A stretch of 53,738 nt of DNA, the filler included, from Sluysia triapertura (lineage: Eukaryota), in NCBI GenBank assembly GCA_046118255.1. It is 4 parts of 4 records of this genome, joined end to end, with 100 filler letters (N's around TTAATTAATTAA, not from the genome) between each part and the next. Parts side by side here need not be neighbours in the genome. Positions count along the whole stretch, not along the records: positions 16,043 to 27,241 come from JBJNIA010187457.1; 3 more parts are not named here. One strand, written 5' to 3'. The notes under the pieces are model-generated. The model made no database searches. It worked only from the letters and a program-made list of their open reading frames with translations, and had not been told where the DNA came from. Below are positions 1 through 50,780 of this stretch, one piece after another. Within the stretch, counting starts at the first letter, position 1. Every line of letters starts with the position of its first letter. The position numbers were made by a program, and so were the translations under genes.

Positions 1-756
1 ATGAATTAAAATTTTATACAATTTAAGTTATAATACAAAATAAGGTTAACAGAATAGAAAGAAAAGTAAAATTTATTATTAAAACTTTTAGAAGGCTTTA
101 ATAATTAATAATTATTAGTTTAGAGTAGATTTTACCCCTCAATATATCGGGGAACCTTAGAAATAAATTAAACTAAAGGTTATTTTAATTGGAGTTTATG
201 ATATTTGCTTTCTTAGACAAAACAAATATCAATCTTAATAGAAACTAACTACTTGTTGCATGGAATAAAAAACAGTCTTAGCTGAATATTTCGGATGTGT
301 CTTGATAGTTTGAATCCACGTAGAAAGAATAACGAATTATATCCGTTTGATAGAAATTGTGTCTGTTGAAAAGATGTAAAAAATACTGTTGATAATACTG
401 CAACTCATTTTACAAATAACTAGTTATTACAAAATGGCGGTATTGCAAATGGCGATTTTCATTGTGTTGATGCTAGTTTATATACTAGTCATCATCCAAT
501 TAAAATCGGCGGAATGTTCTAGAATGTTCTAGAACATTCTAGAAGCTTCTATGCTATTTGTAGAAACTAGTTTTCTTTTTTAAAAAATTAAATTCTTTTT
601 GGAAAATAAATTTTCTTTTTTGGAAATTAAATGTTTTTTAATTAATGTTAATTGATTTTATAATATTTTTTATGATTTTAAATAATTTTAGATAATTTTA
701 AGGCGTTATTATGTCGACTTAGAATTATTTTGTAGGGTTGTGATGGCAGCCTAACA
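1..756 (-). mobile_element. Solo-LTR-like interspersed repeat, family C, copy 1 (distal end may lie outside the window)
   Basis: Collinear similarity to 47460-48055, sharing blocks TTTACCC(C)TCAATATA, GATGCTAGTTTATATAC, CTAGAACATTCTAGAAGCTT and TGATGRCARCCTAACA. Similarity stops at the same base in both copies, reading TGTTAGG on the minus strand (LTR-type TG start). Minus-strand order is HSE array, CCAAT, TATATAAA, then AATAAA, as in a U3-R layout. No TSD confirmed. Confidence 0.6.
477..550 (-). promoter_or_regulatory. Promoter module: perfect heat-shock element array (511-550), CCAAT box (496-500), TATATAAA (477-484, minus)
   Basis: 511-550 = gGAAt gTTCt aGAAt gTTCt aGAAc aTTCt aGAAg cTTCt, i.e. 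8 alternating nGAAn pentamers matching the HSF consensus. Function is inferred. Confidence 0.65.
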
Positions 757-846
757 AAAATAAACAACAACTTCTTCGTCTCTCATGTTTCTTAGCCAGT
801 ATTTATAAAAATGTGATTCCCGAGAACACTTAAATTTTGACTCAAT

Positions 847-1149
847 TTATTTCAGATATGGATTAGTGGTCGACTTTTTTGCACGGTTATCGCCTCTAAA
901 ATTACAGTTATTAAACTTATAGTAAAATGGCACTTCTCCATAAGTTGAGAGTGCTAAAGATGATTGCGATGTGTAAGAATCACATGCATAATCTGGATTC
1001 TTCATATCAAATTTCGGAAAATAATGATTAGTAAGAATAAAATCTAATCTAATAAAAGCTTTCAGATTTATTTCATAAAAATTCATCACAATATCACTTT
1101 TACCCATAGAATTTATCTTATCTGTAGGAGAATCGTCTAAACAGTTCAA
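847..1149 (-). pseudogene. Orphan ORF fragment (100 aa), no recognisable family
   Basis: Protein-like composition and higher GC than flanks. Non-ATG start in the ORF track, no motif recognised. Confidence 0.25.
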
Positions 1150-1410
1150 ACTTGGTTTTTGTTGTCACAATTTTAACAGGTAATGCTTTTAAAATTCGTT
1201 ATTTGAATAATTCTATTATTTAAACAAAAAATTTTTGCTTCGACTTTTCAGAAAATAATAATAGTATTAAACAAATAAAATAATAATAAAAAATTAAAAA
1301 TATTAATAAAAGTAATAATGTTGGGGTAAAAGGCCTAAGCATCAAGAAAAGAAAAAAGAAAACAAACGGCTATCGACAGTAAACTGATTCCAGTACAATA
1401 AAAATAATTA

Positions 1411-2807
1411 GTGAAAACAGGCAGCAAACGAACTATGAGTGATAGAATTACCGAGTCAAATTTTCCAATCAAGACAGATTATGATTGCGAAAAATCTATG
1501 CAAGCTGGTAATAATATAATCCGTCAACGTGAACGAACAACATCAAAATTTAGTGATATTATGTTGCCATTAACAAATATAATTGTGGCTGTGTTCGAGG
1601 CTCTATTATTATGGGAAATGCGCTCTCTTATAACAAATCTATATGTTATCAAGAAATATTTCAACAAATTGTTCGATTATGTTAAAATTTTTGTGAAAGT
1701 AAACGGAACATCTCAAGTGAATAAAGAGTATCGTGTCAAGCACACTGAAATTAATGAAGTTATGAATGAAGTATGCCAGACCACGGATTTAGTAATTAAT
1801 TGGAATTATAAATACGCTACAAAATTTAAGAGAATCAAAACCAGAAGGTTACAACCAACATATGTAATTATGGTTCAAAAAATAACCGATTAGCATTATG
1901 TATTGGACAATGGCACCAATCATCTCTGGATCAAAACGTTATAACAAACAACAACTTGGAATTATTAAATCGAAATGCTAAAACCACAAGAGCAAAACTG
2001 AAGTCTGCTTATATTAAGATGAATGATATAAACAAAGATGATGAATTCAATTTGAATGAAGAACGAGGGGAATTGAAGAATGGGAATTACACAAGAAACT
2101 CATTGCTGGATGATTACAGTGGTCATGGTTATGGCAGATTCACCCGTCATTTCTCGAAGAAGGAAAAAGATTCGTGCAATGCTACGAAAGATCTACTCAA
2201 AATGAACAATTTAATCAATCATGGAGATATACAATGTAATGACTTTATAATTGATTTTATTAATGATCATTTTTACCGCCTTAAACATTTTTATATAATT
2301 TATTATAGGTTATGCAGCATGTGTGAACTTGAAGCTGGATCCAGAAATGAAAAGAAGCGGCTACCCACGAGAATAAAATACAGAAACAAAATTTTTAACT
2401 TTTTAGTAACTGTAAATAGATTTAGTTTTAAAAATGTTCTTGTCTTTAATGTGTATTTATTTTTTGTTAACAATAAATTATATTATCACGAAATAAACAA
2501 ATATAAACAAATAAGAAATATAAAAGGTGTAAATAAAGTTAATTTTAAAAATGAGTTTAGCATCCAGGTTACGGAGTCCCATGAACTTAGCGATATGATT
2601 AACCACTTAAAAAACAAAAAGATCTTTGACAATAACGACATCATCACCTTAGATAATCTTCAACAACAGGAGATTATTGAAGCTGTAACGCATACACAAA
2701 TCCATATTATTAAATCTAAACCTTTAAAGTTTGACTTTATCACAGTTATACTTGAAACTATAAGATTTAAGCTTTTTAATTGTCATCAGATTAAGTTTAA
2801 GCCCTAA
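1411..2807 (+). pseudogene. Probably one disrupted orphan gene (160-aa and 283-aa ORFs)
   Basis: A 283-codon ORF is unlikely by chance at this AT content. The first frame stays open for 16 codons after the TAG at 1891-1893 (HYVLDNGTNHLWIKTL) before the second ORF begins in another frame. A CxxC (CSMC) is present. No family recognised. Confidence 0.45.
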
Positions 2808-4323
2808 AACATAATAAAATTACGGTAACATTCGAACTTACCTCTATAATAATAATAAATAATAATATAATAATAATAAGGCTACAATAAAAGGCCTGCT
2901 CACAGAATTTTAAATGAAAATGTACTTGACTAATTCGGAGGTTTATTAATGTTATTTTCTCTATTATGTAAATAAATTCCACTTGTTTTTTAATAAATGT
3001 AACTCAACAATAATATTCTTATAATTTTCTCAACAAAATGTCTTACTGTTATACTTAAATATAATAAAACAATGATTGAGTTTGTACTTCTATTTAAAAT
3101 AATGGTTTCAAAAGCTAAATAAATATACTCCGCTTGTGAATGCTGGTCCCACTTGCGAAGGAGACCGAAAATCCATACGACCAGTTAAAAATAATACTTT
3201 GCTTAGTGGGCTCGAAGATTCAACCAATCCAATTCCCTTCCAAACATTGCTCCTGCCACTTCTCTTTCTCCTTATCTACTTCCTCAAACTGCTCCTGCTC
3301 GCTTCTGTCTATCTAATTCTACTCTTCCTAGACGATATTCCTTTGTTCTTCCATCCTCCGCTCCTCCATCTAAATCTTTTAAAATAACACCACCTCCTTC
3401 TACAAACTTATCTACACACTTACACTCTGCCCTTCCACCGGTCCGAAAATTACGCTCTGCTCTTCGGCAGAAATTCCTTCGTCGTATTCCTCCAGTTGAT
3501 GTTCCTCCTTCTTCTAATGATGTTCATTCCAATGTTCTTCCTCTTTGTGTTGTTCTTTCTTCTACTGATTCTCCTCCTTCCACTGATGTTGTTTGTATTG
3601 AAATCGCGTCCTCTTCTTCTACTTTCTCTGACAATGCTGAACGGGGATCTGTCGATCAGGATTTTTTAATGAATCTCTACATCTTCCTGTTGTAACTCTT
3701 CTCGTCCTTTTTCTATTGATTCAAAGACTTCCAAACTTAAGCGACCATATCTTTCCAGGAAAGTTAATCCTTCTGACATTTGCCATCCACAAAATCTTTT
3801 CTCTTCCGATGACATTATAACTTTTGTTGATAACCTCCACCTGTCTTCAGAGTTTCCCTTTGTATCTAATTTCTTGACCGAGTCTCTTTATCGCAACTCT
3901 CCAATCTATTCATACCTTTATTGATCATTCTAAAGTTCTTTCTGCTACCAAAATCTTTTTCTTTCTTGGTACCTTGTCTTTGCTGATAAATGCACTGGAA
4001 TTGCCGAACTTCTGGATCCTCTTTCTGTTGACCTTCATCCTTCTCAGACTGACAAGATCCTTATATCCTTTTTAGATTTTCTTCACTATAAAATCAAACT
4101 TCTTACTCAATCATCACCGCTTGTCCTCATTCTCTTTAAAGCAACTTTTTCGATTGTGGCCCTCTTCTTTGTGGATTTATCCAGCGACTCTTCTAAGAAA
4201 ACTTGTACTCGTCTTAACGCTACTTCTACTCGCCTCATTCCGAAAAACGATTGGTTGTAGCTGACAAACCTTCTTCCTCCTTTTCTTCTTATAATTCTAC
4301 TTCCGCCACTCTGTCTTTTATAT

Positions 4324-4497
4324 TGCCACATTAACCGTTGTGGCCAATCCTTCAACAACCAGCAACAACGTAATTCTCCATCTTGATTCGCATGACCTCA
4401 ATCCTTTAGATACATCTTTATTTTTCTCTCATTGTCTCTGTGTCAATTCCATCGATTCTCTGTTCCATCACTTCTAATCCATCTCCAACTTTTCATT
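4324..4497 (+). pseudogene. Two degenerate C2H2 zinc fingers of the retroelement ORF
   Basis: CHINRCGQSFNNQQQRNS(fs)HLDSH at 4324-4393, and C.(fs)CQFHRFSVPSLLIHLQL(fs)H at ~4433-4497. Confidence 0.65.
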
Positions 4498-4689
4498 TGA
4501 AATAGATTCTCTGGTTGACCTTTCAGTAAATACTGAGGACAAGTTATCATACCGACTATCTGAGACGCAGTTGAGGCTTTTCTTCGTGACTTTGAGGCTT
4601 TGACACTTCTATTAGAATCATAAAACCCACCTGTTCGATCTTTCTTCTTGCTGGTAACTTGAATGGATTTTATAGGAATTTTTCCCTTT

Positions 4690-4960
4690 CATACTTGGCT
4701 CACTGGAAGATTATTTTCTGGCCGATTCTTTGGCAGAAAAATCACTGGCTTCTTTTTATTGCTGATCGTTTCACAAGTTCTTCTTACTTTTACGATCCTC
4801 TTGGTTCCAGTGATTTGTCTCAACTGCATACCACTTTGAACTGTATCTTGAATAAGTCCTGAGGATTTCTCACTTACAATCACCATGCATCTTATACATA
4901 AAGCTACTACCCAAGCACCTGACACCACTTTCTGCGGCTTCTTCATTCTTCACTTTTCTC
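4690..4960 (+). pseudogene. Ulp1/SENP-like (peptidase C48) cysteine protease domain of the retroelement
   Basis: IFWPILWQKNHWLLFIAD...YFYDPLG (His 4743-4745, Asp 4794-4796), then after a frameshift QAPDTTFCGFFIL (Gln 4912-4914, Cys 4933-4935). This is the H-D-Q-C order of clan CE proteases. Confidence 0.8.
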
Positions 4961-7900
4961 TAATATGCAAAATTCGGTATTCAGTGTTACAGTCTTCCTT
5001 TTGACTTGAACGGAATTAAATCTCTTCTTGCTTCAACCATTGACAAAGTGCTGGAGCTTCGTTCTTCTCAGAAACTATCTAAACCAACTACTCATCCCTT
5101 CTGCTTCACGTTATCCAACTTCTCTTTTCCGGCTGTATCAATTTCACCACTGCGCTTGACATAGCACATCACACTGCTCCAGAGAACTCTTTGGCAAAGA
5201 AAAAGACCACTTCTCCATCTGATTTTCGTATGGGCAAGAAGTTTCTGGCAAAGCCAAAGGAACCTTTTCCTCTTCCTTTCTGCTGCGTAAAACTGCGACA
5301 AGACTCCTTCCGTAGTTATTCAAAAACGTCTTAGTGAAGAAACCTCAGGTACTCAATTTCCAACGATAAATTTCATCCTGTCTCACTTTTGTCCTGATGA
5401 ATTTCCAACTTTCACCGAATCCGACCTGCTTTCAATTCCGGACTTTGAAGATTTCTTGACAGATTTTCCTTTTTCTCTTGAAGAAATTAAAGCAGCTTTC
5501 TCTACTTGTGACAAATCTTCATCTCCTGGCCCCTGACAAATCTTTTCTTAACTGGAAGCAAGTCGATCCTGAGTTTTCCTTTCTTCTATTTCTTTTCAAT
5601 TTTATTCATATTACTACTGACATTCTTCAACAATGGCGACACTTTCACTCTCATCTTATTCTGAAACCGGGTAAATCTTCTGAATCAACTTTTCCTTCTT
5701 CTTGGCGTCCTATTGCTACTGTTAATACCTCTTATAGGCTTTACACCGAAATGCTCAATGCTAGACTTCTTGATTAGATCAAGCAGGTAGACTTATCTGT
5801 CCTATCCAGAAAGCTCTTATCCATCCAGATGCCTGTCTTGAGCATATTCAATCTTTGCAAACTTTACTTCACACTAGTACAACTCATTCTCCCAAATCAC
5901 CTTTGTTTGTCTGTTGGCTCGACTTTTCTAATGCTTTCGGTTCAGTTCCGCATAGTTATCTCTTCCGGTTGCTTGAAAGATAAGGTCTTCAAAAATCCAC
6001 TATTACTTTTCTTAAGAATCTTTAGAAGGACAACTTTTGTATTTACTCTCTCGGCCCTTATACATCTGTTCCTGTTCCGGTCCAGGTTGGTGTCAAGCAG
6101 GGTTGTCCCCTGTTTATGACGCTCTTTTGTCTTTCCATTGAACCACTTCTTCGTTTCGTATCTTCCAATCTTTCTCCTTTTCCCTATCTTGGTTTTGACT
6201 TCAGTTGTCTTGCTTATGCTGACGATATCATGCTTGTTTCCAATTCTTTCTCTTCTCTTCAACTTACTCTTGACAAACTCTCATAACTCTTCTTTCATCA
6301 ATCTTAAATTCCGTCCTGATAAATGCGGCTTTCTCAATACTGTTCGTTCTACTTCTTCTTCTCTTATTATTTATTAGAGTCATTTGTCTATTATCGACTC
6401 TAATTCTCGCTAAACTTATCTCGGCTCCAAGATTGGTTTTCTAAACATCTATCCATCGAAACTTTGTTTCGCACCGCCTTGTCTGATTGTTCAAAAATTC
6501 TATATACTCCTTTGCCTCCAATCCAGAAAATCAGGGCTATAAAAATCTTTATTCTTTCTCGATTTCCTAACCGTTTCAGGGCCATCAAGATCTTACGTAC
6601 TCAATTCGGCAAAGATCGGATGAATCCTAGTGACGATGATGATGACTCTCCAGCTTTTAATCATAGTTTCTCTAATCTTCTCCGTCTTGCTCTTCAAATT
6701 CACTATCAATCTACCTCTGTTGATCTTGAGAGACTTAGTTTTACTTCCTTACATTCTGAATACCTTATCCAAACCATTGTTCATTGTCTTCGAATTTTTA
6801 CTTCTTGTGACAACACTCTTCGCCGCAAACCTGATCTTATCTCTACTCTTAATTGGCTTTCCGGTTCTATCTATCATGATATGTTTCCCACTAAAGCAAC
6901 TCTTTGAGCTAATGTGAGAGACTGCTGCAAATCCATAAGAGCTAAGCATGACATTATGGTTCTTTTTGCTTTTGACAATGATTCATTTACTCTTAAACTT
7001 TCTTTGCAATCTTCTTCGTTTTCGTTTACCAATGATGAGAAGGACAATGTTACTCAAGCCTTCCATCAGTTGACTGGATTGTCCCATTTTTTAAATGACA
7101 ATCCCTGAAATGCCAGTCTGTCTTAACTCTTTCTCTGGTGCAATCTCATATGTCCAATAAACTTCTTCTTAGTTCTGAACTTCCTGACAAGACATCCTTC
7201 TTCTTACTCAAAGCTCTTAAACTCATCTCATCTTTCTTTAGGGACCATAGAAGTGACGTTGAACGCGACTCTGAATGTCAACTCTTCTCCAACCGTTCAG
7301 ATGTCCCAGACAAAGTCAAAAAACAAAGGCCGGACCTTTTCTTTCAATTAAATTCTTCTTTCTTCACTATTAATGTCAAAATTCCTTTTGATAAACTTGA
7401 ATCTTTCCCTGGCATCCACAAGGAAAACTCTCTTAAATATCTTCCTTTTTCTCAACATCTTTCTAGAATCTCTCGCTCTAAAATTATTATCTACACCTTA
7501 ATCTTTCCTTCTCTTGGCACTACTTATTCTGAAAACTTTACTGTTCTTAAATCTTTCAAATTCCTCTCCTCACAAGTCATCAAAGTAATATTCGACACTG
7601 CTTTTGGAATGATCCAATTTTCACACCGATTCTTTCCAAATCACGTCTTGTCCCGGTATCCGAATGTCACAGCAATTGGTAAAATGAAACCGAAAAAATA
7701 ACACTTCATCGAACTGATACTTTCATTAACATTTTTATCAATTTTTTTATCATGTGTGCAAATCATTTATGTTATTGCCCTCTGGCAAAGATTTATTAGT
7801 GTAAATAATAAAAGCTAGGTATTATAACAAAATAGCAAATCGAAAGTAATTTTTATAAAATATATTTTGGGATTTAGTATATTCACTGAGAAGTAACATG

Positions 7901-16042: not shown

Positions 16043-18840
16043 AAATACATTAGAGTGAGATTTAATATAAACATTATATAATTAAAATTTATCAACAATT
16101 TTAGATAAAAACAATGATAGTATGTGCCACTTATACATTACTACTTATTACTTATAAATTACTTATTATTGCAAAAAAATTTCAGACAGAAAACAATAAT
16201 TATTATGTGTTATTACTTATAAATTATTTAGTATTATTATTAACAATTTCAGACAAAAAGTATAGTTACTACTTGTTAATTATTACTATTAAATGATACT
16301 TTGTAGATTATATTACTAATTTTATTACTTCTATACAGAATTTAATAAATTTTCGTCATATAAAAATAGTATAAATAGACAATTTGATTTTCAACCCACA
16401 TATAATTTTACAGAATTTCATACAAGATTTTACTTAAGTTGACAGAGTATTTAACAGTATTACGTAGTATTTGGAATAGTACTTGGCACAATATTTGATA
16501 CAGAATTTGGCACACTATTTCACACAGATTTTGGACAGTACAAATTATTATTAGTGGAATTCGTTCGAGTATCCTGAACTCTATTGGAACAATTTAAGAA
16601 ATATTTAATCACTAACTGGATCAAACATTGAACGTAACGGTAATTATTATTGCTTTTTTGTCTGAAAAAATTAAAATATTGTACTTTATTGACATTAAAA
16701 TTTGTCATTATTTGTCATTTTATATTTTGTTATGAAGTGTTTAAATCTTTGTTGAATAAAGATTTATTGCCTTATTAATTAATTGTTAGATAGAAAGAGA
16801 GAGCCCCAAATGAAGGATAAAACAAAATAGAATAAAATAAAATAAAGCGAGATAAAATAATATTTATTCATACAACAATCAAAGTCAAAGTCGAGCATCC
16901 TCGCAAATAAAACAAAGTAAAATAAAACAAAAAAACTTACTTCCGGTCAACGGAACGAGTATCCGAACTCAGAATAAACAAAAATTAATTGAATAGTAAA
17001 ACGATAGAAAGTTTAAGTTGTTGCTGACGAACAATAATTTATATAAGTGAAGATATTAAAAGTATTATTGAGGACTAAAGTGTGTATTGACTAAAGTTGA
17101 GAATCAATTATAAAGTAACTTAAAGATATTGAGGAATAGTAACGTTTTACAGAATTTGTATTAAAAGCCTAATCGTTTACATTTATTATAAGTATATATT
17201 AATTTATTGACAAAAGAAAGTATTCAGAATCGTTTGAAGATGAAATCTAAGAATTGAATTTAATTATTAAATATTATTAAGCTTGAATTTTTTTAAATTC
17301 AACAAATTTATCTTTAATTATAATTTTAATTTTTTATATTAATTAGATATAAAAATTAAAAATTGAAATGGAAATATATTTTCCTTCAACTATTAAAATT
17401 TATGTTTCACTGATTTTATTAGAGTGCTGGTAGCCAAATCCAGGTGGAAAAGAAACACAATTATAATTTGTGCAAAACAATAAAATACGCCTATTAGTAC
17501 TACGTTATTATTAGCTAATTGTTTTAAGCTAAAGATGTGAAACATTATTTTTATAATCTTATTTTATTCAGAATAAAAATTTATTTATTTAATAAATTAT
17601 TTTAAGAAATGAAAATAATTAATAACATTATTTATTACTTAAAAAATAAATATTACTTATTTATTATTTTAAAATATGATAATTAATTGTATTTTTATTT
17701 TTATAGTTTTATTTTATTTAGAATAAAAATTTATTTATTAATTAAAATTATTTTAAAAAATGATAATTAATAATATTATTTTATAACTGCTTTTTTATCC
17801 TACACTCCATGAAAGTCCATTGAATGCATAAAATAACAAAGTTTAAACCAACCATATGAATAAGCACTGTATAAAAAGTTAGAAAGTCAAAACAATTTTT
17901 ATGTAACATATAACTAGAAAATAACTAGTAAAATTTACACTCAGATCCACTAGACCCGACTGATAGGCAGAAGGTTACGTTATCACGCTTATATAACGTA
18001 TTTTTTTAATTCTTTATTCAGTTTTCTTCAGACGGAGCTCACATTTGAAACGTAGAGACGTTTTATTGAGATATCTCAATTTTAACAAAAATATTGATGA
18101 AATTATATCAATTATCTACTAAAAATTAATACATTCGATAAATAAAAGTTGAAATAAAAGTAATTAAAATCGAAATATTAAGTGCAACGCAATTTAAAGT
18201 TTCATTTAATTTGTTTCGCTTTTTGTATTGCTGAAAAATATTTTCGAAAATTTATTTTTTATTTTTAACTTATTGATAAATCATTTGATGATTTAAGAAA
18301 CGGATTCTTTATCAATTATACAATTTTAAAGGACTTTTCAATAAAACTATTATATATTTAATAAATTATGTACAAATACATTTTATAAATTTCTTTAAAA
18401 ATTTCGATAGTTTTCGATACCATTGGTCTATTTAATCTTAAATAGATATAATAAATTTCGTTCCTGATTTTAAATATTAAATTATTTATGAAAAGATATC
18501 GTTAAAAATAAAAATAAATAATATTTTAAATAAAGTCTACAAACTTTAGATATTATATCCAAATTGAAAATAATAATTTTATTTAATTAAGTTATATTAA
18601 TATTTTTTCAAGTAAAAAGACTCATAAAATATAAATATTACTTCAAACATTATATAAAGCAAAATTTTTCAAAAATTCATTAGTCTGAAATAGCTAAAAT
18701 TAGTCTAAAATAGAATTATTTTATCCACAAACAAAACTAATTAAACAAAGCGCTTTTTTTTCTTAGTGACAAAACTAATTCAATGCAAAATAATAAAAAA
18801 ATGGCAATTTCATTTTGAATTGTGATACAATCTATTCTTA

Positions 18841-18886
18841 TTTTATTATTATTATCATTATTATTATTTATTATTATTATTTATTA

Positions 18887-18931
<45 letters not shown>
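18841..18931. repeat. (TTA)n microsatellite, imperfect
   Basis: Direct reading. It accounts for the poly-I/Y/L ORF 18815-19051. Confidence 0.95.
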
Positions 18932-18932
<1 letters not shown>

Positions 18933-19295
18933 CGTGTTTTCCCGAAAATAAGACAAGGCTTAAATTAATTTTCACTTCACAATATGACACTAGGGTTTAT
19001 TTTTGGAGTGTATCTTATTTTCATCTATCGAAAAACAAAGTTACAAAGTAGAGAATTATGAAATTTCTGAATACATAAGAAACATGAAAACATTTACTAA
19101 TGAATAACAAGTTTTATTTTTAAAAACCATTAATTATAAATCATTTAAAAATAACCTCATCGTCGTCATCCTATGAAATGTCATCCTAGTTACTGAATTC
19201 CAAAATTTCATTACTTTAAGTCATTCTCTCAAGGACATTGTGCGGCAAAGGAGAAATGCTTTGATAGTTGCTAATAAAATCTTACTTGAAGTTTA
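18932..19295 (-). mobile_element. 3' end of a pogo/Tigger-like (Tc1-mariner superfamily) DNA transposon
   Basis: TA followed by (T)CGTGTTTTCCCGAAAATAAGACA, which resembles pogo-type TIRs. About 350 bp is similar, in inverted orientation, to 44286-44624. Minus frame TIKAFLLC resembles the I.KSF..C motif near pogo transposase C-termini. Confidence 0.65.
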
Positions 19296-19299
19296 GGGT

Positions 19300-20630
19300 T
19301 TTGTGGTGTAGGAATAATGTATATAAATGATTATTATACCTGTTTTGTATCACAATTTTCGAATTCCCCAGTGTAAATTCATGATTCAATTCATCGAGGG
19401 CGACATAAAATACAAAATTCTTTTTGGTTACGAAATATTCAAAAAGTTTTTTATTAACTAAACTTTTAGTAATTAAAGATTTAAGAAAAACACGTAAACT
19501 ATGATTATTTAATATATTTTGAATTCCAAAAAAAAACGTTAATAAATTTTGATACCATATAAATGATTTTGTTGTTCATCAACATCTCTGAATTCTCATC
19601 ATCGTACGACATGTTGGACCAAAAGATCGAGCATTTCTCTAAAAGGTTTAAATAATAATTACAATAAAATTTTACTAGTAATATTTTCTGAATGTTACTG
19701 TTTTCTTCTCGATCTTGATCTCCAAGTGTTATAAGGACCAAAATTCCCTTCTTACCGATTTGATGCTGCTGTTGAATAACTTTAATAACTGCTCTCATTA
19801 ATTTGTTTAATATGATGCGGTCATACTTTTGGGTCGCATACAAAATGCATTTTGCCACATTAATAGTCGATTTATGTAATTCTATACGGATTGGTTTAAT
19901 CTTATAAATCTAAGACAAGTTTATCTGTTTTTATATTCAATCGGTTGATTATATGCATATCTTTAACCGGTTTGTGTGGTTCTAATTTCATTAACCTAAT
20001 TTTATATACATCTTTCATAGGTTTGTCTACTTATAAATCCATCAATCTAATTTTATATACATCTTTAACAGGTTTTTTGAGTCGCGTGACTCATATTACA
20101 CTTATTGAGTGGAAAACGAACAATATTGTCATGGTAATACTTCATAACTTTATTCGGAAAATCATTCATGATTAATTCACGTGGTTTACTAACGATCATA
20201 CCTAACAGTCTTCGCAAATTCTAAAATAGTATCAATCGAATAACGAATACTATGATTTTGCTTTTCTTCTCTCACAATTTTATTAATCATCTTCTTCAAT
20301 TGCTTATAAAATGACGTATTGGGCAATAATAATATTTGAGGTACTAATCGATACGAATTTTTATTCCAGCCAAAAGAATAAACTAAAAACATAGGTGTTT
20401 AAACATTTTCTTGATATCAATATCGCTGTGCATCAAGATTACTGTCTGATAAACCAATTTTTCTTTTGTTTCGTTTGGTCCGAAGCACAACAAATCTCTC
20501 CCAGTTTTATAAATGTATCTCATGGTAATACCAAAAAAATTTTTTCTAGAAAATTTTACCACGAGAAGCCTCTGTGCGTTTTTTTGTAACTGATGATTTG
20601 AAAACGCCACTCAAATTATTCGTCATGCTG
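19300..20630 (-). pseudogene. Disrupted orphan gene with a 51-bp (17-aa) internal repeat
   Basis: Successive minus-strand ORF pieces (75, 67 and 117 aa, plus an open run SLRVFLKSLITK...NNHLY). Repeat unit KP(V/M)KDVYKIRLM occurs about three times at ~19930-20080. Confidence 0.4.
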
Positions 20631-20734
20631 TATAAAGTATATTTCCTTTTTTTAATTTTTTTACTAAAATCTCCTTTTAATTATTTTTGTAATTTTATTT
20701 TTTAGATGCTTTAAATAACAGCGTTATTATTGGT

Positions 20735-21178
20735 CATCCAATCAGGCCTTTAATAATGTTAGTTGAGAATAATAAGTCCTGATTGGATGCTATTTTGGCA
20801 GTAAAATTATTGATCTGATGATTGACCATCATCAGTGTTGGCACTCTAATAAGAATTGTGATACATAGTGTAAACACTGATGATGGTAGCAACCAGTTTA
20901 ACGGCATTGATTGAAATGAAAAAATTAAAATTTTGACTAAAATAATTCAATAATTGGTAATAATAATAACAACAATAACAATATTGTTATTATTATTATC
21001 AAGAATTAAAAAAAATCGCATAAATTTCTCTTAAAATTACACTTTACACGATCTTTTCTTTTAATCTTGATTTACTTCTGACATAAAATGATTTAAAAAA
21101 TGAAATAACAGTTTGATATTGTATGAAGGAGCAACGATAACGGGGTATACGATGCTCGAGTTATTGTTGCTGCTTCAT
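20735..21178. other. Cluster of 55-63-nt inverted-repeat hairpins
   Basis: CATCCAATCAGG/CCTGATTGGATG (20735-20789). ACCATCATCAGTGTT/AACACTGATGATGGT (20825-20887). ATGAAGGAGCAACGATAAC/GTTATTGTTGCTGCTTCAT (21123-21178). A low-complexity hairpin lies at ~20958-20998. Confidence 0.8.
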
Positions 21179-21179
21179 T

Positions 21180-21950
21180 GTATAAAATTGAATTCTTTAA
21201 ACTGTATTAGATTTTAGTAATCTTGTTATTGAATTTTAACATATTGAAATAACTTAATTGTGTTTGAAACTAAATTTCTGAGTAATGATTATTTTGAAAG
21301 AATTGTTAAGTATGCTTAATCTTTGAATGTATAATATTTGATATGAGTCTTGAAGTGAATTGAAGAGTGTTGGAATAAATTCTTCGATGTTGATTGCAGT
21401 TTTTATGTTTGACAAGTTTTATGTATTGAAATATAATGGATAAAGGTTTATTGAGAAGATTGTAATTTGTTGAATTTAAAAGGGCAATTACAAAATAACT
21501 CTTGTATATTTAAGGTGTTGTTATACAATGTTGATGACGATTATATGTAGATGAATAGTGAGTTTGGAATATTGTAATTGATTCAAGGTGTGAAATAGGT
21601 ATGTTATGCGTCTCAAATAAGTATACCAGTGCTGTGGAATGGTATTAAATGCAATTGTGATTTATATATTGTAATTTTGTGATTGTGGTTCGATTTAAGC
21701 GAATAAACTATTAAATGAATGTTAGCGAATGTTAGATATTAATTTCCAAAATGTAGTGTAAAATGGAGGGTTTGAAAGTATTAGATGGATTATTTCGAAT
21801 GATTTTGTTGATGGATTATTGTGAATGTCGAGTAATGTTTTTTTGTGAGTTAGTGATGTAATTCGGTAGTATTAAATATGATTGTGATTTAGATGTTGTG
21901 AAATTTAAATAAATATTTAGTGGTTGTGAGTGTTGGCCACCACATTCTTT
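21180..21950 (-). mobile_element. Possible highly decayed 3' end of a LINE
   Basis: Strong C/A skew on the minus strand. FIPTLFNSLQD...SFK resembles the P.L(W/F)NSLP...FK motif at the end of CR1/L2-group ORF2. No RT core seen. Confidence 0.3.
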
Positions 21951-22199
21951 AACTTGTACTAAGTTTTAAGATAATTTTATAAAAATTGCACAACTCAAGT
22001 GAAGCTTCAATTCATATTAAATGTTAATTATAACTTTTTACTCCAAAAGTACTTGGTGCTATAAGTATAATTAACGAATCATTAGCTTAATGATTAAAAA
22101 ATATTTTAGTTTTGTGGCCGGCTTACTTCTGTACTCTTATATTGACATGTCAGGATCATCAAGAAATAGTGATTGTAAGGTATCTCAACTCGAATATAA

Positions 22200-23330
22200 A
22201 GGTATCAATATTTTCTAAAGTTTTACAAAAAAATTCATAAGTATATTTATTAATTATGCTATGGTTTTTCCTAACCTTACAGAATAAAGCAACCTTATAC
22301 GTGAGTCCACCAACGTACTAGGCTTACCGGTTAGGGCTAGCCGTTGGATTTTAAGTAAAAGAGTTTTATTTGAATATTAAAACTTCTCAATTCTTACTTG
22401 TTTAATCCTAAAGCATTTTCTGGCTTTTAGCTTAATGATGAAATGAAATCTGGAGGTTATACAATTTTATAATTTTATTATAGGTTAACTATGGTATTTT
22501 ACGAGAATCCTATGAGAAGGATTTATATAAATTGATTTTTCGAAGCAGAATGAAATTCTGATAAAACTTTTATGCGTGGGCTATTTTAGGATTTTGAAAC
22601 TGTAGAAATTTTAGAATACTCAAAAATTTGTTAACTTTATATTAAAAAAAGAAACGAGTAACACAAGATAAAAGTTAATGGCAAGAATTTAGTAATAATA
22701 ATAATAGATAGTTAATTTACAAAAATTAACTGTTAGTTAATTTAATTAACAAAAAATGTTTAAAGAGTAAGTTTACGTTTAAGTGTAAGTTCAAAATATT
22801 ATTATAAATTGATTTTACCTGTATTTTTCGGATGATACTTACAAGTATCGACCTTACACAAATAAACTAACGTTGAAATCAAAAATTTTGTTTAGCAAAA
22901 TAGGTGAGTAGTTGTTTGGTTTTAAGTGTTTGATATCTATGCGGCGATGAAAAACTGTGTCCAGAGAGATCGAAATAAAAATTGTGAGTTGTGTTCAGAA
23001 TTGTAAGAATATTTATAGGTCTTTTTGTTGACCTTGAATGTGCAAAACAAAAATTTTTTGATTTCAAAATTTCTTGTTTTCAAAAATTATAATTATTAAT
23101 TATTTTATAAAATTAATTATAAAAATTAATGAAAACTATTTACCTTTTAAATAATAAAATTCCACAATAAAATATAAAAACTAGTAAAATTCCACAATTA
23201 ATATTTTTACAAAAATCAATCTTTAAAATCAATATATTTACAGTATTGTGTTAATATGGAATCAATAATTAATAATGCGTGTGGACACAAATCAATAATA
23301 AATTAATGCTATTACAATTAATTTAATTAA
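22200..23330 (+). repeat. Interspersed repeat family B, copy 1 (boundaries approximate)
   Basis: 52-nt core at 22299-22350, plus AGAATAAAG, CTGGAGGT, ATTGATTTTTCGAA and GATTTTGAAACT blocks shared with 49650-50780. Confidence 0.7.
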
Positions 23331-24429
23331 AATTGTTTAAAAATAATTTTTGATCAATAACTTTACGTATGATGTTTGCATTGGAAGTTGTATCACACAT
23401 TAAAGTACAATTATGAAATTTATCAATGTTACGAACACTGAGAGTGAGAAACATGTCAACGTAGATAACTTAAAAATCATCAATTTTAATTAATTTTATA
23501 AAGTTAAATTTCTATGTATTTACTAGTGTACATAGTAAAAGTATAATACTCATCAAGAGATCATTTAATATGCTGCTGAAATTGACGTGCGACTTAATGT
23601 TAACATATTGTGCATTGTATCAAAAGTAATTATTGAAAATAATTTTTATATTTGATTAGATTTATATTTGATGTATTATTGCATTAATAAGTATTGTTAT
23701 AACTATTATATTAAATTTTAATTTTTTTATTTTGAAGAGTTTGTTTGCCACAAACTTATTATCTCATTATCATTGTCGCCACAAAATTCATTGGTATTGC
23801 TAGGTAATACTCAGATGTAAATTAATATTCAAATGTGATTAAAATTGGTGACCACAAAACCAACTCTACTAAATAGGCGTATGTTGTCGACATACATAAT
23901 AATTAAGTCGAATTCCCGACTTCCCAGCAATTATCTAAACACAACCATATTTTTGTTAATTTGAATAAACCAATCAATTTGAATGAACTGACCTTTGAAA
24001 TTGTATTATTTAAAATGGTCTTTACGATTAAATTTCTAATTTGAATTTTATAACTTTATATATTATTTTTAATATTGGAACGTTTATATTGTTTGAATTT
24101 TATTTTTGGAAATAAATCTTGTTAAAGTAAGAAATTATCTATTGTTAATTAAAAAATTACATATTGTTAATTAAAAAATTGTTAAACTAACGTAATAAAT
24201 AAATTTTAATACTTTGTTTTAATAAATTAAATTTTAATGTTTTGTTTTAATCTGAAGGTCAGATTGAAAACAATTATAAAGAGACTCGAATTTTGTAAAA
24301 GAAGACACAATCTTTTTAACATAACTTTTTATTGCATTTTGTAAAATCATTCAATCTTTTTAACACCATTTTTATTCGTGATCTGCGGTTCGGAACCAGT
24401 TCACTGTTTAACTCCAAATAAATTTTTCT

Positions 24430-49649: not shown

Positions 49650-50780
49650 TTAACGTTTTTATTTATTTTTACTAAAAAGAATGCATATATTTGTGAGATT
49701 TTTTGTTTATAGAATAAAGTAAAGCCTATACGTGAATTCACCAATGTACTAGGCTTACCGGTTAGGGATAGCTATTGGATTTATAAAAGAATTTCAATTG
49801 AAGATTGGAATAACTTCCTCAGGTTCACCAGATTCTATCTAAAGCGTTTATTAATTTTGATGAATTATAAACTGGAAGTTTTCAAAATTTTATATTGGAA
49901 TATTTAGCTGGCCAAAAAATTAACAATTTAAATTTTATATTATTATGATAGCTTGCGAAAATCGTATGAAAAGGTTTTATATCAATTGATTTTTCGAAAA
50001 TCAGAATTAAATTCTGATAAAGCTTTAATGCAGTAGCAAGTTTACGATTTTGAAACTATAAAAATTATTAATATTCAAAATAATAACTGGTTTTTTAATG
50101 ATATATTAACAAAATTTATAATATCCATAAGGGTTATAAGAATTATAATACAAATAAAATTGTTGCACTGATTAACTGTTATCGAGTTAATTATTCAAAT
50201 AATAACAAATTTAAATATATGTTACGTAAGAACCGACAAAAGGTTCCCAATTTTTTTATAGAAATGGAATTTAAGTATATTTTGCGTGGGATACCTTCAG
50301 GTATCAAAACCTTAACAAAATAAACTAAAGTAATCTATTTTTGAAAATCGACAAGATCTTGGTCAAGGATAAATTTTAATCGGTTAATCGTCTTCTTGGT
50401 TGTATAAGAGTTGTGAAAATTTTGATTAAAAATTCGTAGAAACCGTGAAAAATTTATCGTGTAGACAAAGTAAACTGTACCGAAATATAAAAAATTGTGT
50501 TGTTTTATGTTATTGTATGTTATTTATATGCATATTTTATGTTGGCCTTGGCCTTTTATTAAAACAAAAAAAGTTTTATTTTATAATACAATGTTTTGAA
50601 AATATTTTAATAATATTAAAAATACTTACGTTAGTTTAATTTTTAAAACTTCAAAATTCATAATTTTCAAAATAATTAATTCCAAAATAAAATTTTTAAC
50701 AAAATAATTAATCCAAATAATAAATCAATAAAGTTATAAATACTTACCAATGTTTGTTTGTATCCAATAACAATATTGTT
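49650..50780 (+). repeat. Interspersed repeat family B, copy 4 (boundaries approximate)
   Basis: Core at 49730-49781. Collinear with copy 1 over about 1 kb. Confidence 0.7.

What the first reader, a model, noticed from the sequence alone, without database searches (positions are those of the whole stretch)
22299..22350. 52-nt gap-free core conserved in four diverged repeat copies, with compensatory base changes
Seen at 22299-22350(+), 24925-24976(-), 35697-35748(-) and 49730-49781(+). Consensus ACGTGAGTTCA CCAAYG TA CTRG G CTTA CCGGT TAGG G CYAG C CGTTGG ATT, with no indels although the flanks are heavily diverged. It folds into a bulged hairpin. One pair is C-G (copies 1, 3), U-G (copy 2) and U-A (copy 4). 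CUAG/CUAG in copy 1 becomes CUGG/CCAG in copy 2. Copies 3 and 4 also have some mismatches. Inference: a selected cis-acting RNA or ssDNA structure (packaging, priming, replication or ribozyme-like) of an unclassified ~1-kb element. I recognise no known RNA family. This is the best candidate for an undescribed system in the window.
Basis: partly seen in the sequence, partly recalled or inferred. Interest (0 to 1): 0.75.

Follow-up and report, generated by a model that had tools for sequence, protein, structure and literature searches.

The report
Conserved hairpin core of abundant repeat
The 53-base GC-rich stretch is real and is the best-kept part of a very abundant, roughly 1.1-kb non-coding mobile element in an AT-rich eukaryotic genome; this fits a signal the element needs in order to be copied, an ordinary kind of feature rather than a new system.

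Summary
They are 53 nt long with no gaps and 5 differences. One pair changes on both sides (A-U to G-C) and one changes from C-G to U-G. Copies 3 and 4 lie outside my piece.

The core sits inside two collinear but about 60% identical AT-rich elements. These are 22257-23315(+) and 23943-25080(-), each nested in other repeats. They have candidate 5- and 6-bp target-site duplications, no terminal inverted or direct repeats, and no ORF.

In contigs of the run that holds the most of this stretch, summed depth on the core is about 1.8x10^5, against about 10-20 for single-copy contigs. That implies roughly 10^4 copies. Similarity breaks off sharply at 22301 and 22351/2.

Rfam, ARAGORN, Pfam, three sequence collections and the paper library all gave no match.

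My reading is that this is a module kept by selection on diverged master copies of a non-autonomous element. It is probably a strand-specific stem-loop with an 11-nt leader. The evidence for structure is thin: simulation p is about 0.015, and the RNA fold z-score is only -1.3. Nothing supports a ribozyme. The closest analogues are the highly conserved domains of SINEs and the 3' stem-loops of LINEs. Interest is modest.

The parts
22299..22351 (+). Core copy 1: an 11-nt unpaired leader, then a bulged hairpin of 6+4+4 bp with a 5-nt loop, then ATTT.
   Evidence: Contig similarity breaks off at 22301 (196 contigs) and at 22351/22352 (167 and 166 contigs).
24924..24976 (-). Core copy 2, with 5 differences from copy 1. 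Most contigs carry the copy-1 letter at 24945 and 24961.
   Evidence: table 3: at 24945 G>C in 175985 of 182277 depth; at 24961 A>G in 167580 of 174515.
22257..23315 (+). Element 1, 1059 nt, AT-rich, without an ORF. The core starts 43 nt from its left end. It is inserted into another high-copy repeat.
   Evidence: Empty-site joint 22251->23316 with 5 letters that fit either side; an alternative joint is 22230->23316. Collinear homology with element 2.
22252..22256 (.). Candidate target-site duplication AATTA, left copy for element 1.
   Evidence: Sequence read; 'both=5' in the joints table.
23316..23320 (.). Candidate target-site duplication AATTA, right copy for element 1.
23943..25080 (-). 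Element 2, 1138 nt, in the opposite orientation. The core starts 105 nt from its core-proximal end.
   Evidence: Joints 23922/23939/23942->25081 (few contigs, short sides). Flanking direct repeat seen.
23937..23942 (.). Candidate target-site duplication AAACAC for element 2.
   Evidence: Read directly from the sequence.
25081..25086 (.). Candidate target-site duplication AAACAC for element 2, second copy.
   Evidence: Read directly from the sequence.
22863..22873 (+). Second conserved patch, 11 nt identical (TAAACTAACGT), 512 nt beyond the core in element 1.
   Evidence: Alignment A2. The block 301-600 nt beyond the core has a local-alignment z of 9.0.
24435..24445 (-). The same 11-nt patch in element 2, 479 nt beyond its core and collinear with element 1.

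Best explanation
The core is the most constrained module of a very abundant (order 10^4 copies), roughly 1.1-kb, AT-rich, non-coding interspersed repeat. Two old copies lie here in opposite orientation, each inserted into other repeats.

Inserted copies decay neutrally. A core at 91% identity beside flanks at about 60% therefore means the copies descend from master lineages that diverged everywhere except in the core, because propagation required it. This step is inference.

It would have the unpaired leader GUGAGUYCA in front and a short U/T run behind. The machinery that copies the element would read it, either a reverse transcriptase or Rep-like enzyme supplied in trans, or the transcription apparatus.

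Shown: the conservation, the copy number, the sharp edges, the nesting, the short flanking direct repeats, and a pair-preserving pattern of substitution. Inferred: selection on master copies, that the fold matters, and which enzyme reads it. The transcribed strand remains unresolved.
For: - Two gap-free 53-nt copies at 91% identity, within about 60% identical collinear elements. Homology beyond the core is significant for 600 nt (z 5.2 and 9.0).
- Summed contig depth on the core bins is 124545 and 83085, and about 1.8x10^5 at single positions. Single-copy contigs have depth 8-21, and flanking bins 34-6000. Hundreds of contigs lose similarity exactly at 22301 and 22351/2.
- Joints that skip each element, together with the 5- and 6-bp flanking direct repeats, show both are insertions.
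- All 5 differences keep the hairpin: one double change, one C-G to U-G, two unpaired. Simulation p is 0.015.
- The fold is strand-specific.
- Other GC-richer patches of the elements are not conserved.
- The core is present with the same majority letters in the contigs of another organism's run, X2.
Against: - Only two copies could be examined, so covariation rests on one event that may mark a subfamily. A third partial copy, in table 5c, also has CTGG.
- RNA hairpin stability is ordinary (z -1.3).
- In a longer context copy 1 prefers another fold.
- Unpaired positions are as conserved as paired ones.
- The element has no recognisable hallmarks: no TIR, LTR, poly(A) or tRNA head. Its class and mobilising enzyme are therefore unknown.
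- Other short patches nearby are also very deep, for example 110000 at 23470. The core is the extreme case of a common pattern in this genome, not unique.
Confidence: 0.6

Rival explanations
1. The core is a double-stranded DNA site, such as an internal promoter or a binding site for a transposase or host factor, read by its sequence. The palindrome reflects a dimeric binder or is incidental, and no hairpin forms.
For: The 11-nt leader and the loop are as conserved as the stems. Hairpin stability is ordinary as RNA. Copy 1 refolds in a longer context.
Against: The A-U to G-C double change and the asymmetric wobble pairs are not expected for a protein-read duplex site. Only one end of the element carries the core, which does not suit a cut-and-paste transposase.
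Confidence: 0.2
2. The core is a small RNA gene or its retroposed copies: a roughly 51-nt transcript made of a leader, a hairpin and a U-run, in the style of pol III. It spread by retroposition, and the 1.1-kb similarity around it is secondary.
For: The edges at 22301 and 22351/2 are sharp. The flanks are A-rich in the loose-end consensus, and some copies have a T-run right after the core. The core ends in ATTT(T).
Against: Sequence beyond the core is collinear and significantly similar for 600 nt in the two copies. The insertion boundaries lie 43-105 nt and about 960 nt away from the core. There is no Rfam or tRNA match. Neither local copy has a poly(A) tail.
Confidence: 0.08
3. The core is an independent GC-rich palindromic mini-element that inserted separately into older AT-rich repeats. 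This would resemble the GC clusters of yeast mitochondria or bacterial REP/RPE elements.
For: Copy number on the core is 20-50 times that on the flanks, and the flanks are unrelated in most contigs (loose-end agreement about 0.5).
Against: Both local cores lie at collinear positions of homologous elements, with weakly conserved A-rich motifs on both sides. No target-site duplication hugs the core.
Confidence: 0.07
4. The core is kept alike by ectopic, GC-biased gene conversion among dispersed copies, not by any function.
For: It is the GC-richest patch (53% GC in about 24% GC DNA). Its copy number is very high.
Against: Other GC-richer patches of the same elements are not homogenised. The edges are sharp to the base in hundreds of contigs. 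Conversion would not produce pair-preserving substitutions.
Confidence: 0.03
5. The core is a short protein-coding exon of a multicopy gene.
For: One frame on each strand is open across the core, and 3 of the 5 differences share a codon phase.
Against: Three of 5 in one phase is expected 63% of the time by chance (my calculation). In copy 2 the open frames are only 19-29 aa, and two of the three are closed by stops right at the core's edges. There is no Pfam hit and no protein sharing words with the minus-frame peptide. Only 51 nt is deep in the contigs.
Confidence: 0.02

Closest known systems
Highly conserved domains (HCDs) of SINE superfamilies: CORE, V, Deu, Ceph, Nin-DC and Meta (PMC4824008, PMC4758252, PMC5804259; abstracts only)
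   Same: A short central stretch stays almost unchanged while the rest of the element diverges beyond easy alignment. Copy number is very high. The function of the domain is unknown.
   Different: Those elements are SINEs, with heads derived from small RNAs and tails derived from LINEs (PMC5786205 abstract), and typically only a few hundred nt long (my own knowledge). Here the element is 1.06-1.14 kb with no tRNA-like or Rfam-recognisable head, and the core lies 43-105 nt from one end. I could not compare the sequence with HCD consensus sequences. No paper in the library holds 16-mers of the core, and none holds two or more of six 10-11-mers taken from it.
3' stem-loops of stringent-type LINEs and their partner SINEs, for example eel UnaL2/UnaSINE1 and CR1/L2 tails (own knowledge)
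   Same: A conserved hairpin near one end is needed in cis for recognition by the reverse transcriptase. Target-site duplications are variable and short. If the element is read on the opposite strand, the core lies near the 3' end. The core-proximal end is the one with a shared terminal dinucleotide (CA on that strand).
   Different: On that strand the hairpin has a conserved C.A mismatch. The 43-105 nt beyond the core are not simple tail repeats, and the two copies differ there by 60 nt. No partner LINE was seen.
Subterminal hairpins of rolling-circle or single-strand transposons: the Helitron 3' hairpin and IS200/IS605 ends (own knowledge)
   Same: An asymmetric element with a strand-specific hairpin near one end only and no terminal inverted repeats. 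The DNA fold is more unusual than the RNA fold.
   Different: The element lacks 5'-TC and 3'-CTRR ends. The hairpin is not 10-12 nt from an end. Flanking direct repeats are present, whereas Helitrons make none.
GC-rich palindromic elements in AT-rich genomes: yeast mitochondrial GC clusters, Rickettsia RPEs and bacterial REPs (own knowledge)
   Same: A GC-rich imperfect palindrome scattered in thousands of copies through AT-rich DNA.
   Different: Here the palindrome is part of a longer homologous element. It lies in what appears to be nuclear eukaryotic DNA, where single-copy depth is about 10-20 and 11 kb holds no long ORF.

Membership tests
SINE with highly conserved domain | Short domain conserved among otherwise diverged copies or subfamilies | tested here: met
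   Core at 91% identity against about 60% for the elements overall. Core depth is 20-50 times that of the flanks.
SINE with highly conserved domain | Head derived from tRNA, 5S or 7SL with a pol III promoter | tested here: not met
   ARAGORN finds no tRNA. Rfam shows nothing on or upstream of the core even with lax filters.
SINE with highly conserved domain | Short length (under about 600 nt) and a LINE-type or poly(A) tail | tested here: not met
   The elements are 1059 and 1138 nt between the insertion joints. There is no poly(A) and no shared tail.
LINE/SINE 3' stem-loop (stringent recognition) | Hairpin at the extreme 3' end, followed by short tandem repeats | tested here: inconclusive
   The core is 43-105 nt from one end. 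Element 2 carries a roughly 28-nt duplication there. The transcribed strand is not established.
LINE/SINE 3' stem-loop (stringent recognition) | The same sequence at the 3' end of an autonomous, RT-encoding partner | not testable with these tools
MITE / cut-and-paste DNA transposon | Terminal inverted repeats and a target-site duplication of fixed length | tested here: not met
   The first 80 nt against the reverse complement of the last 80 nt scores no better than shuffles for either element. The candidate duplications are 5 and 6 bp.
LTR element / TRIM | Terminal direct repeats with TG..CA ends, and a PBS next to the 5' LTR | tested here: not met
   There are no terminal direct repeats. The TGG-led stretch on the minus strand is not placed next to any LTR.
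Helitron | 5'-TC and 3'-CTRR ends, a hairpin 10-12 nt from the 3' end, insertion between A and T without duplication | tested here: not met
   The ends read do not fit on either strand, and flanking direct repeats are present.
Known structured RNA or self-cleaving ribozyme (Rfam 15) | A match to a covariance model | tested here: not met
   No hit covers the core as a whole at E up to 10, in the 11-kb scan or in the 230- and 266-nt scans. The only overlap is a far-sub-threshold TD-2 row (15.6 bits against a gathering score of 48.7, E 6.7) that starts in the core's 3' half at 22327.

The most novel reading that the evidence does not exclude
The 51-nt unit (GUGAGUYCA leader, bulged hairpin, U-run) is a free-standing structured small RNA or single-strand DNA signal of a kind not yet described. 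It could be the recognition module of an unknown mobilisation system, shared by many unrelated carrier elements. It burst to about 10^4 copies in this lineage, while related organisms appear to keep far fewer: roughly tens in X2 by depth ratio, and few or none detectable in X3 and X4.
Probability: 0.08. Interest if true: 0.7.

Novelty: new member of a known kind. Interest (0 to 1): 0.33.

Why it matters
Conserved domains inside otherwise fast-evolving non-autonomous elements are common, but their function is largely unknown. This one is short and sharply bounded. It is extremely abundant in one lineage and scarce in relatives, and it comes with a testable strand-specific fold. A full harvest of copies could therefore give a clean test of whether such a domain acts as a structure. 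Beyond that, it is mainly an annotation: this stretch is repeat DNA, not a gene or a new cellular system.

Tried and rejected
**Searches for more copies, all blank**
- Exact-pattern scans of viral contigs, metagenome contigs and genome contigs.
- A word search with the minus-frame peptide, done to catch ORFs called over other copies.
- Full-text paper searches with 16-mers and with 10-11-mers of the core.
- A covariance-model search of the piece with filters off.

**Ideas considered and dropped**
- Coding exon: see the rival explanations.
- Spliced-leader RNA gene. GTGAGT follows a short stretch and an Sm-like AUUUGUG follows the hairpin in copy 2, but the would-be leader exon is not conserved between copies.
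- tRNA-derived head or primer-binding site. The leader ends in ...CCACCA, but no tRNA fold exists and the geometry is wrong for a primer-binding site.
- 5S box-C likeness (GGTTAG...TTGGAT). There is no Rfam 5S hit at E up to 10.
- Hammerhead or other ribozymes. The conserved motifs are absent and Rfam has no hit.
- Introner. The element ends carry no AG acceptor.
- miRNA precursor. The stem is only 14 bp.

**Organism**
The organism could not be named, because run names are coded. An MRG15-like pseudogene with the motif GWNKN hints at an animal, which is inference only. One atlas look-up of a neighbouring ORF gave only generic eukaryotic ARM-like neighbours.

Full report
**Setting**

The piece (16043-27241) has about 24% GC. 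It has no ORF longer than 117 aa apart from reading frames that run through a tandem repeat and N. It has no tRNA and no Rfam match near gathering score. It reads as non-coding eukaryotic DNA packed with repeats. A frameshifted MRG15/MSL3-chromodomain-like pseudogene lies at about 19500-20610(-).

**Observation**

Two copies of the core lie in the piece, at 22299-22351(+) and 24924-24976(-). They are 53 nt long, gap-free and 91% identical, and 2572 nt separate them. Chance does not give this. The 17-nt centre with up to 3 mismatches occurs twice, against 0.00 expected. A covariance model of the core scores 85 bits on both copies and at most 12 bits elsewhere.

The five differences fall at core positions 9, 16, 22, 32 and 40.
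- Positions 22 and 40 are partners and change together, A-U to G-C.
- Position 16 turns C-G into U-G.
- Positions 9 and 32 are unpaired.

Both copies fold into the same hairpin of 6+4+4 bp with two bulges and a 5-nt loop, at -16 kcal/mol. Copies 3 and 4 of the finding lie outside my piece.

**How good is the case for a structure?**

The case is modest.
- With two sequences the column-shuffle control cannot discriminate (282 of 500).
- In my simulation, five random, transition-biased substitutions give at least one compensatory double change with no broken pair in 1.5% of trials.
- The fold is strand-specific. The opposite strand has 1-2 C.A mismatches.
- As RNA the hairpin is not unusually stable (z -1.3).
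- In a 144-nt context, copy 1 prefers to pair an upstream CCUAACC with the core's GGUUAGG. Copy 2 keeps the hairpin.
- The unpaired leader and loop are as conserved as the stems.

**What the core belongs to**

The DNA beyond the core, on the side away from the nearer element end, is collinear and significantly similar between the copies. Local-alignment z is 5.2 for nt 1-300 and 9.0 for nt 301-600, against shuffles. On the other side z stays below 2. Overall identity is about 60%. A second small island, TAAACTAACGT, lies about 500 nt from the core in both copies.

I laid the contigs of four public runs on 21800-25500. X1 holds 53% of the stretch's sampled words and is probably this organism or the window's own source. 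In X1, several contigs join 22230-22251 directly to 23316, and a few join 23922-23942 to 25081. Both elements are therefore insertions into other repeats.
- The 22251->23316 joint has 5 letters that fit either side. These correspond to AATTA at 22252-22256 and 23316-23320.
- Element 2 is flanked by AAACAC at 23937-23942 and 25081-25086.

This gives elements of 1059 nt (22257-23315, +) and 1138 nt (23943-25080, -). Their cores start 43 and 105 nt from the core-proximal end.

Neither element has terminal inverted repeats, terminal direct repeats, a poly(A) tail or a shared distal end. Both start with TG at the core-proximal end. The element class is therefore open. Duplications of unequal length and one variable end lean towards a retroposon, but the transcribed strand is unresolved. 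The defined end, and a weak fall of depth away from the core in element 1, favour the opposite strand.

**Abundance**

In X1, single-copy contigs have depth 8-21. The bins holding the cores sum to 124545 and 83085, and single core positions reach about 1.8x10^5. Neighbouring bins have 34-6000. The tool warns that summed depth is not a copy number, so I read this only as an order of magnitude: about 10^4 copies.

Similarity to copy 1 ends at 22301 in 196 contigs and at 22351/22352 in 167 and 166 contigs. The loose letters beyond agree only about 50% and are A-rich. Most copies therefore share only the core at 80% likeness or better.

Most contigs carry the copy-1 letter at the two listed positions where copy 2 differs, 24945 and 24961. 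Copy 2's U-G pair is therefore a derived single change.

Runs of other organisms hold the core far more thinly:
- X2: depth of about 120-155 at core positions, with the same majority letters.
- X4: about 8.
- X3: none listed.

Another repeat at 23470 differs much less between runs. This suggests a lineage-specific burst.

The core is not alone in being deep. Patches at 23470 (110000), 23894 (39000) and 25357-25378 (22000-32000) show that short, well-kept islands in decayed AT-rich repeats are common here.

**Interpretation**

After insertion all positions decay alike. A 91% core beside about 60% flanks therefore means the two copies come from master lineages that diverged everywhere but in the core, so the core was needed for propagation. 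GC-richness alone does not explain it, since other GC-richer patches of the same elements are not kept. I take the core to be a cis-acting module of a non-autonomous element, probably read as a single-stranded stem-loop with its leader. A duplex promoter or binding site is the main rival.

Other readings fared as follows.
- A coding exon is very unlikely. Open frames in copy 2 are only 19-29 aa, Pfam is blank, and no protein shares words with the minus-frame peptide.
- No known RNA family fits.
- The core was not found in the viral, metagenome or prokaryote collections, or in the paper library.

**Limits**

I could not obtain further genomic copies. The N stretches near 26880-26985 were left alone.

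**Verdict**

It is best filed as the highly conserved domain of an abundant non-autonomous interspersed repeat, with suggestive but unproven hairpin constraint. It is a new member of a known kind and of modest interest.

Noticed in passing
window 19500-20610 (-): A frameshifted reading frame resembles an MRG15/MSL3 chromodomain protein. Two adjacent ORFs weakly hit PF22732 at profile positions 1-29 and 43-77, and the motif GWNKN is present. It is probably a pseudogene or retrocopy and hints at an animal genome.
   Followed up: partly
window 26556-27141: A tandem repeat of 162 nt, with copies 98% and 80% identical to the reference copy, interrupted by an N stretch. An open frame runs through the units.
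   Followed up: no
window 23440-23490, 23890-23930 and 25350-25380: Other short patches have very high summed contig depth in run X1 (about 110000, 39000 and 22000-32000). They are also present in the runs of related organisms. Short, well-kept islands of other repeat families therefore surround the finding.
   Followed up: no
window 20819-20895 (+): A strong hairpin with 14-nt perfectly complementary arms (CCATCATCAGTGTT / AACACTGATGATGG). It was picked up only as a sub-threshold miRNA-like Rfam match (23 bits, E 0.86).
   Followed up: no
window 18840-18935 and 25540-25700: Long (ATT)n and T-rich microsatellite-like runs.
   Followed up: no
window 24985-25045 (element 2, between the core and its near end): An apparent tandem duplication of about 28 nt. 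On the + strand the unit TTCTATYACTTWA occurs twice. It accounts for part of the length difference from element 1.
   Followed up: partly
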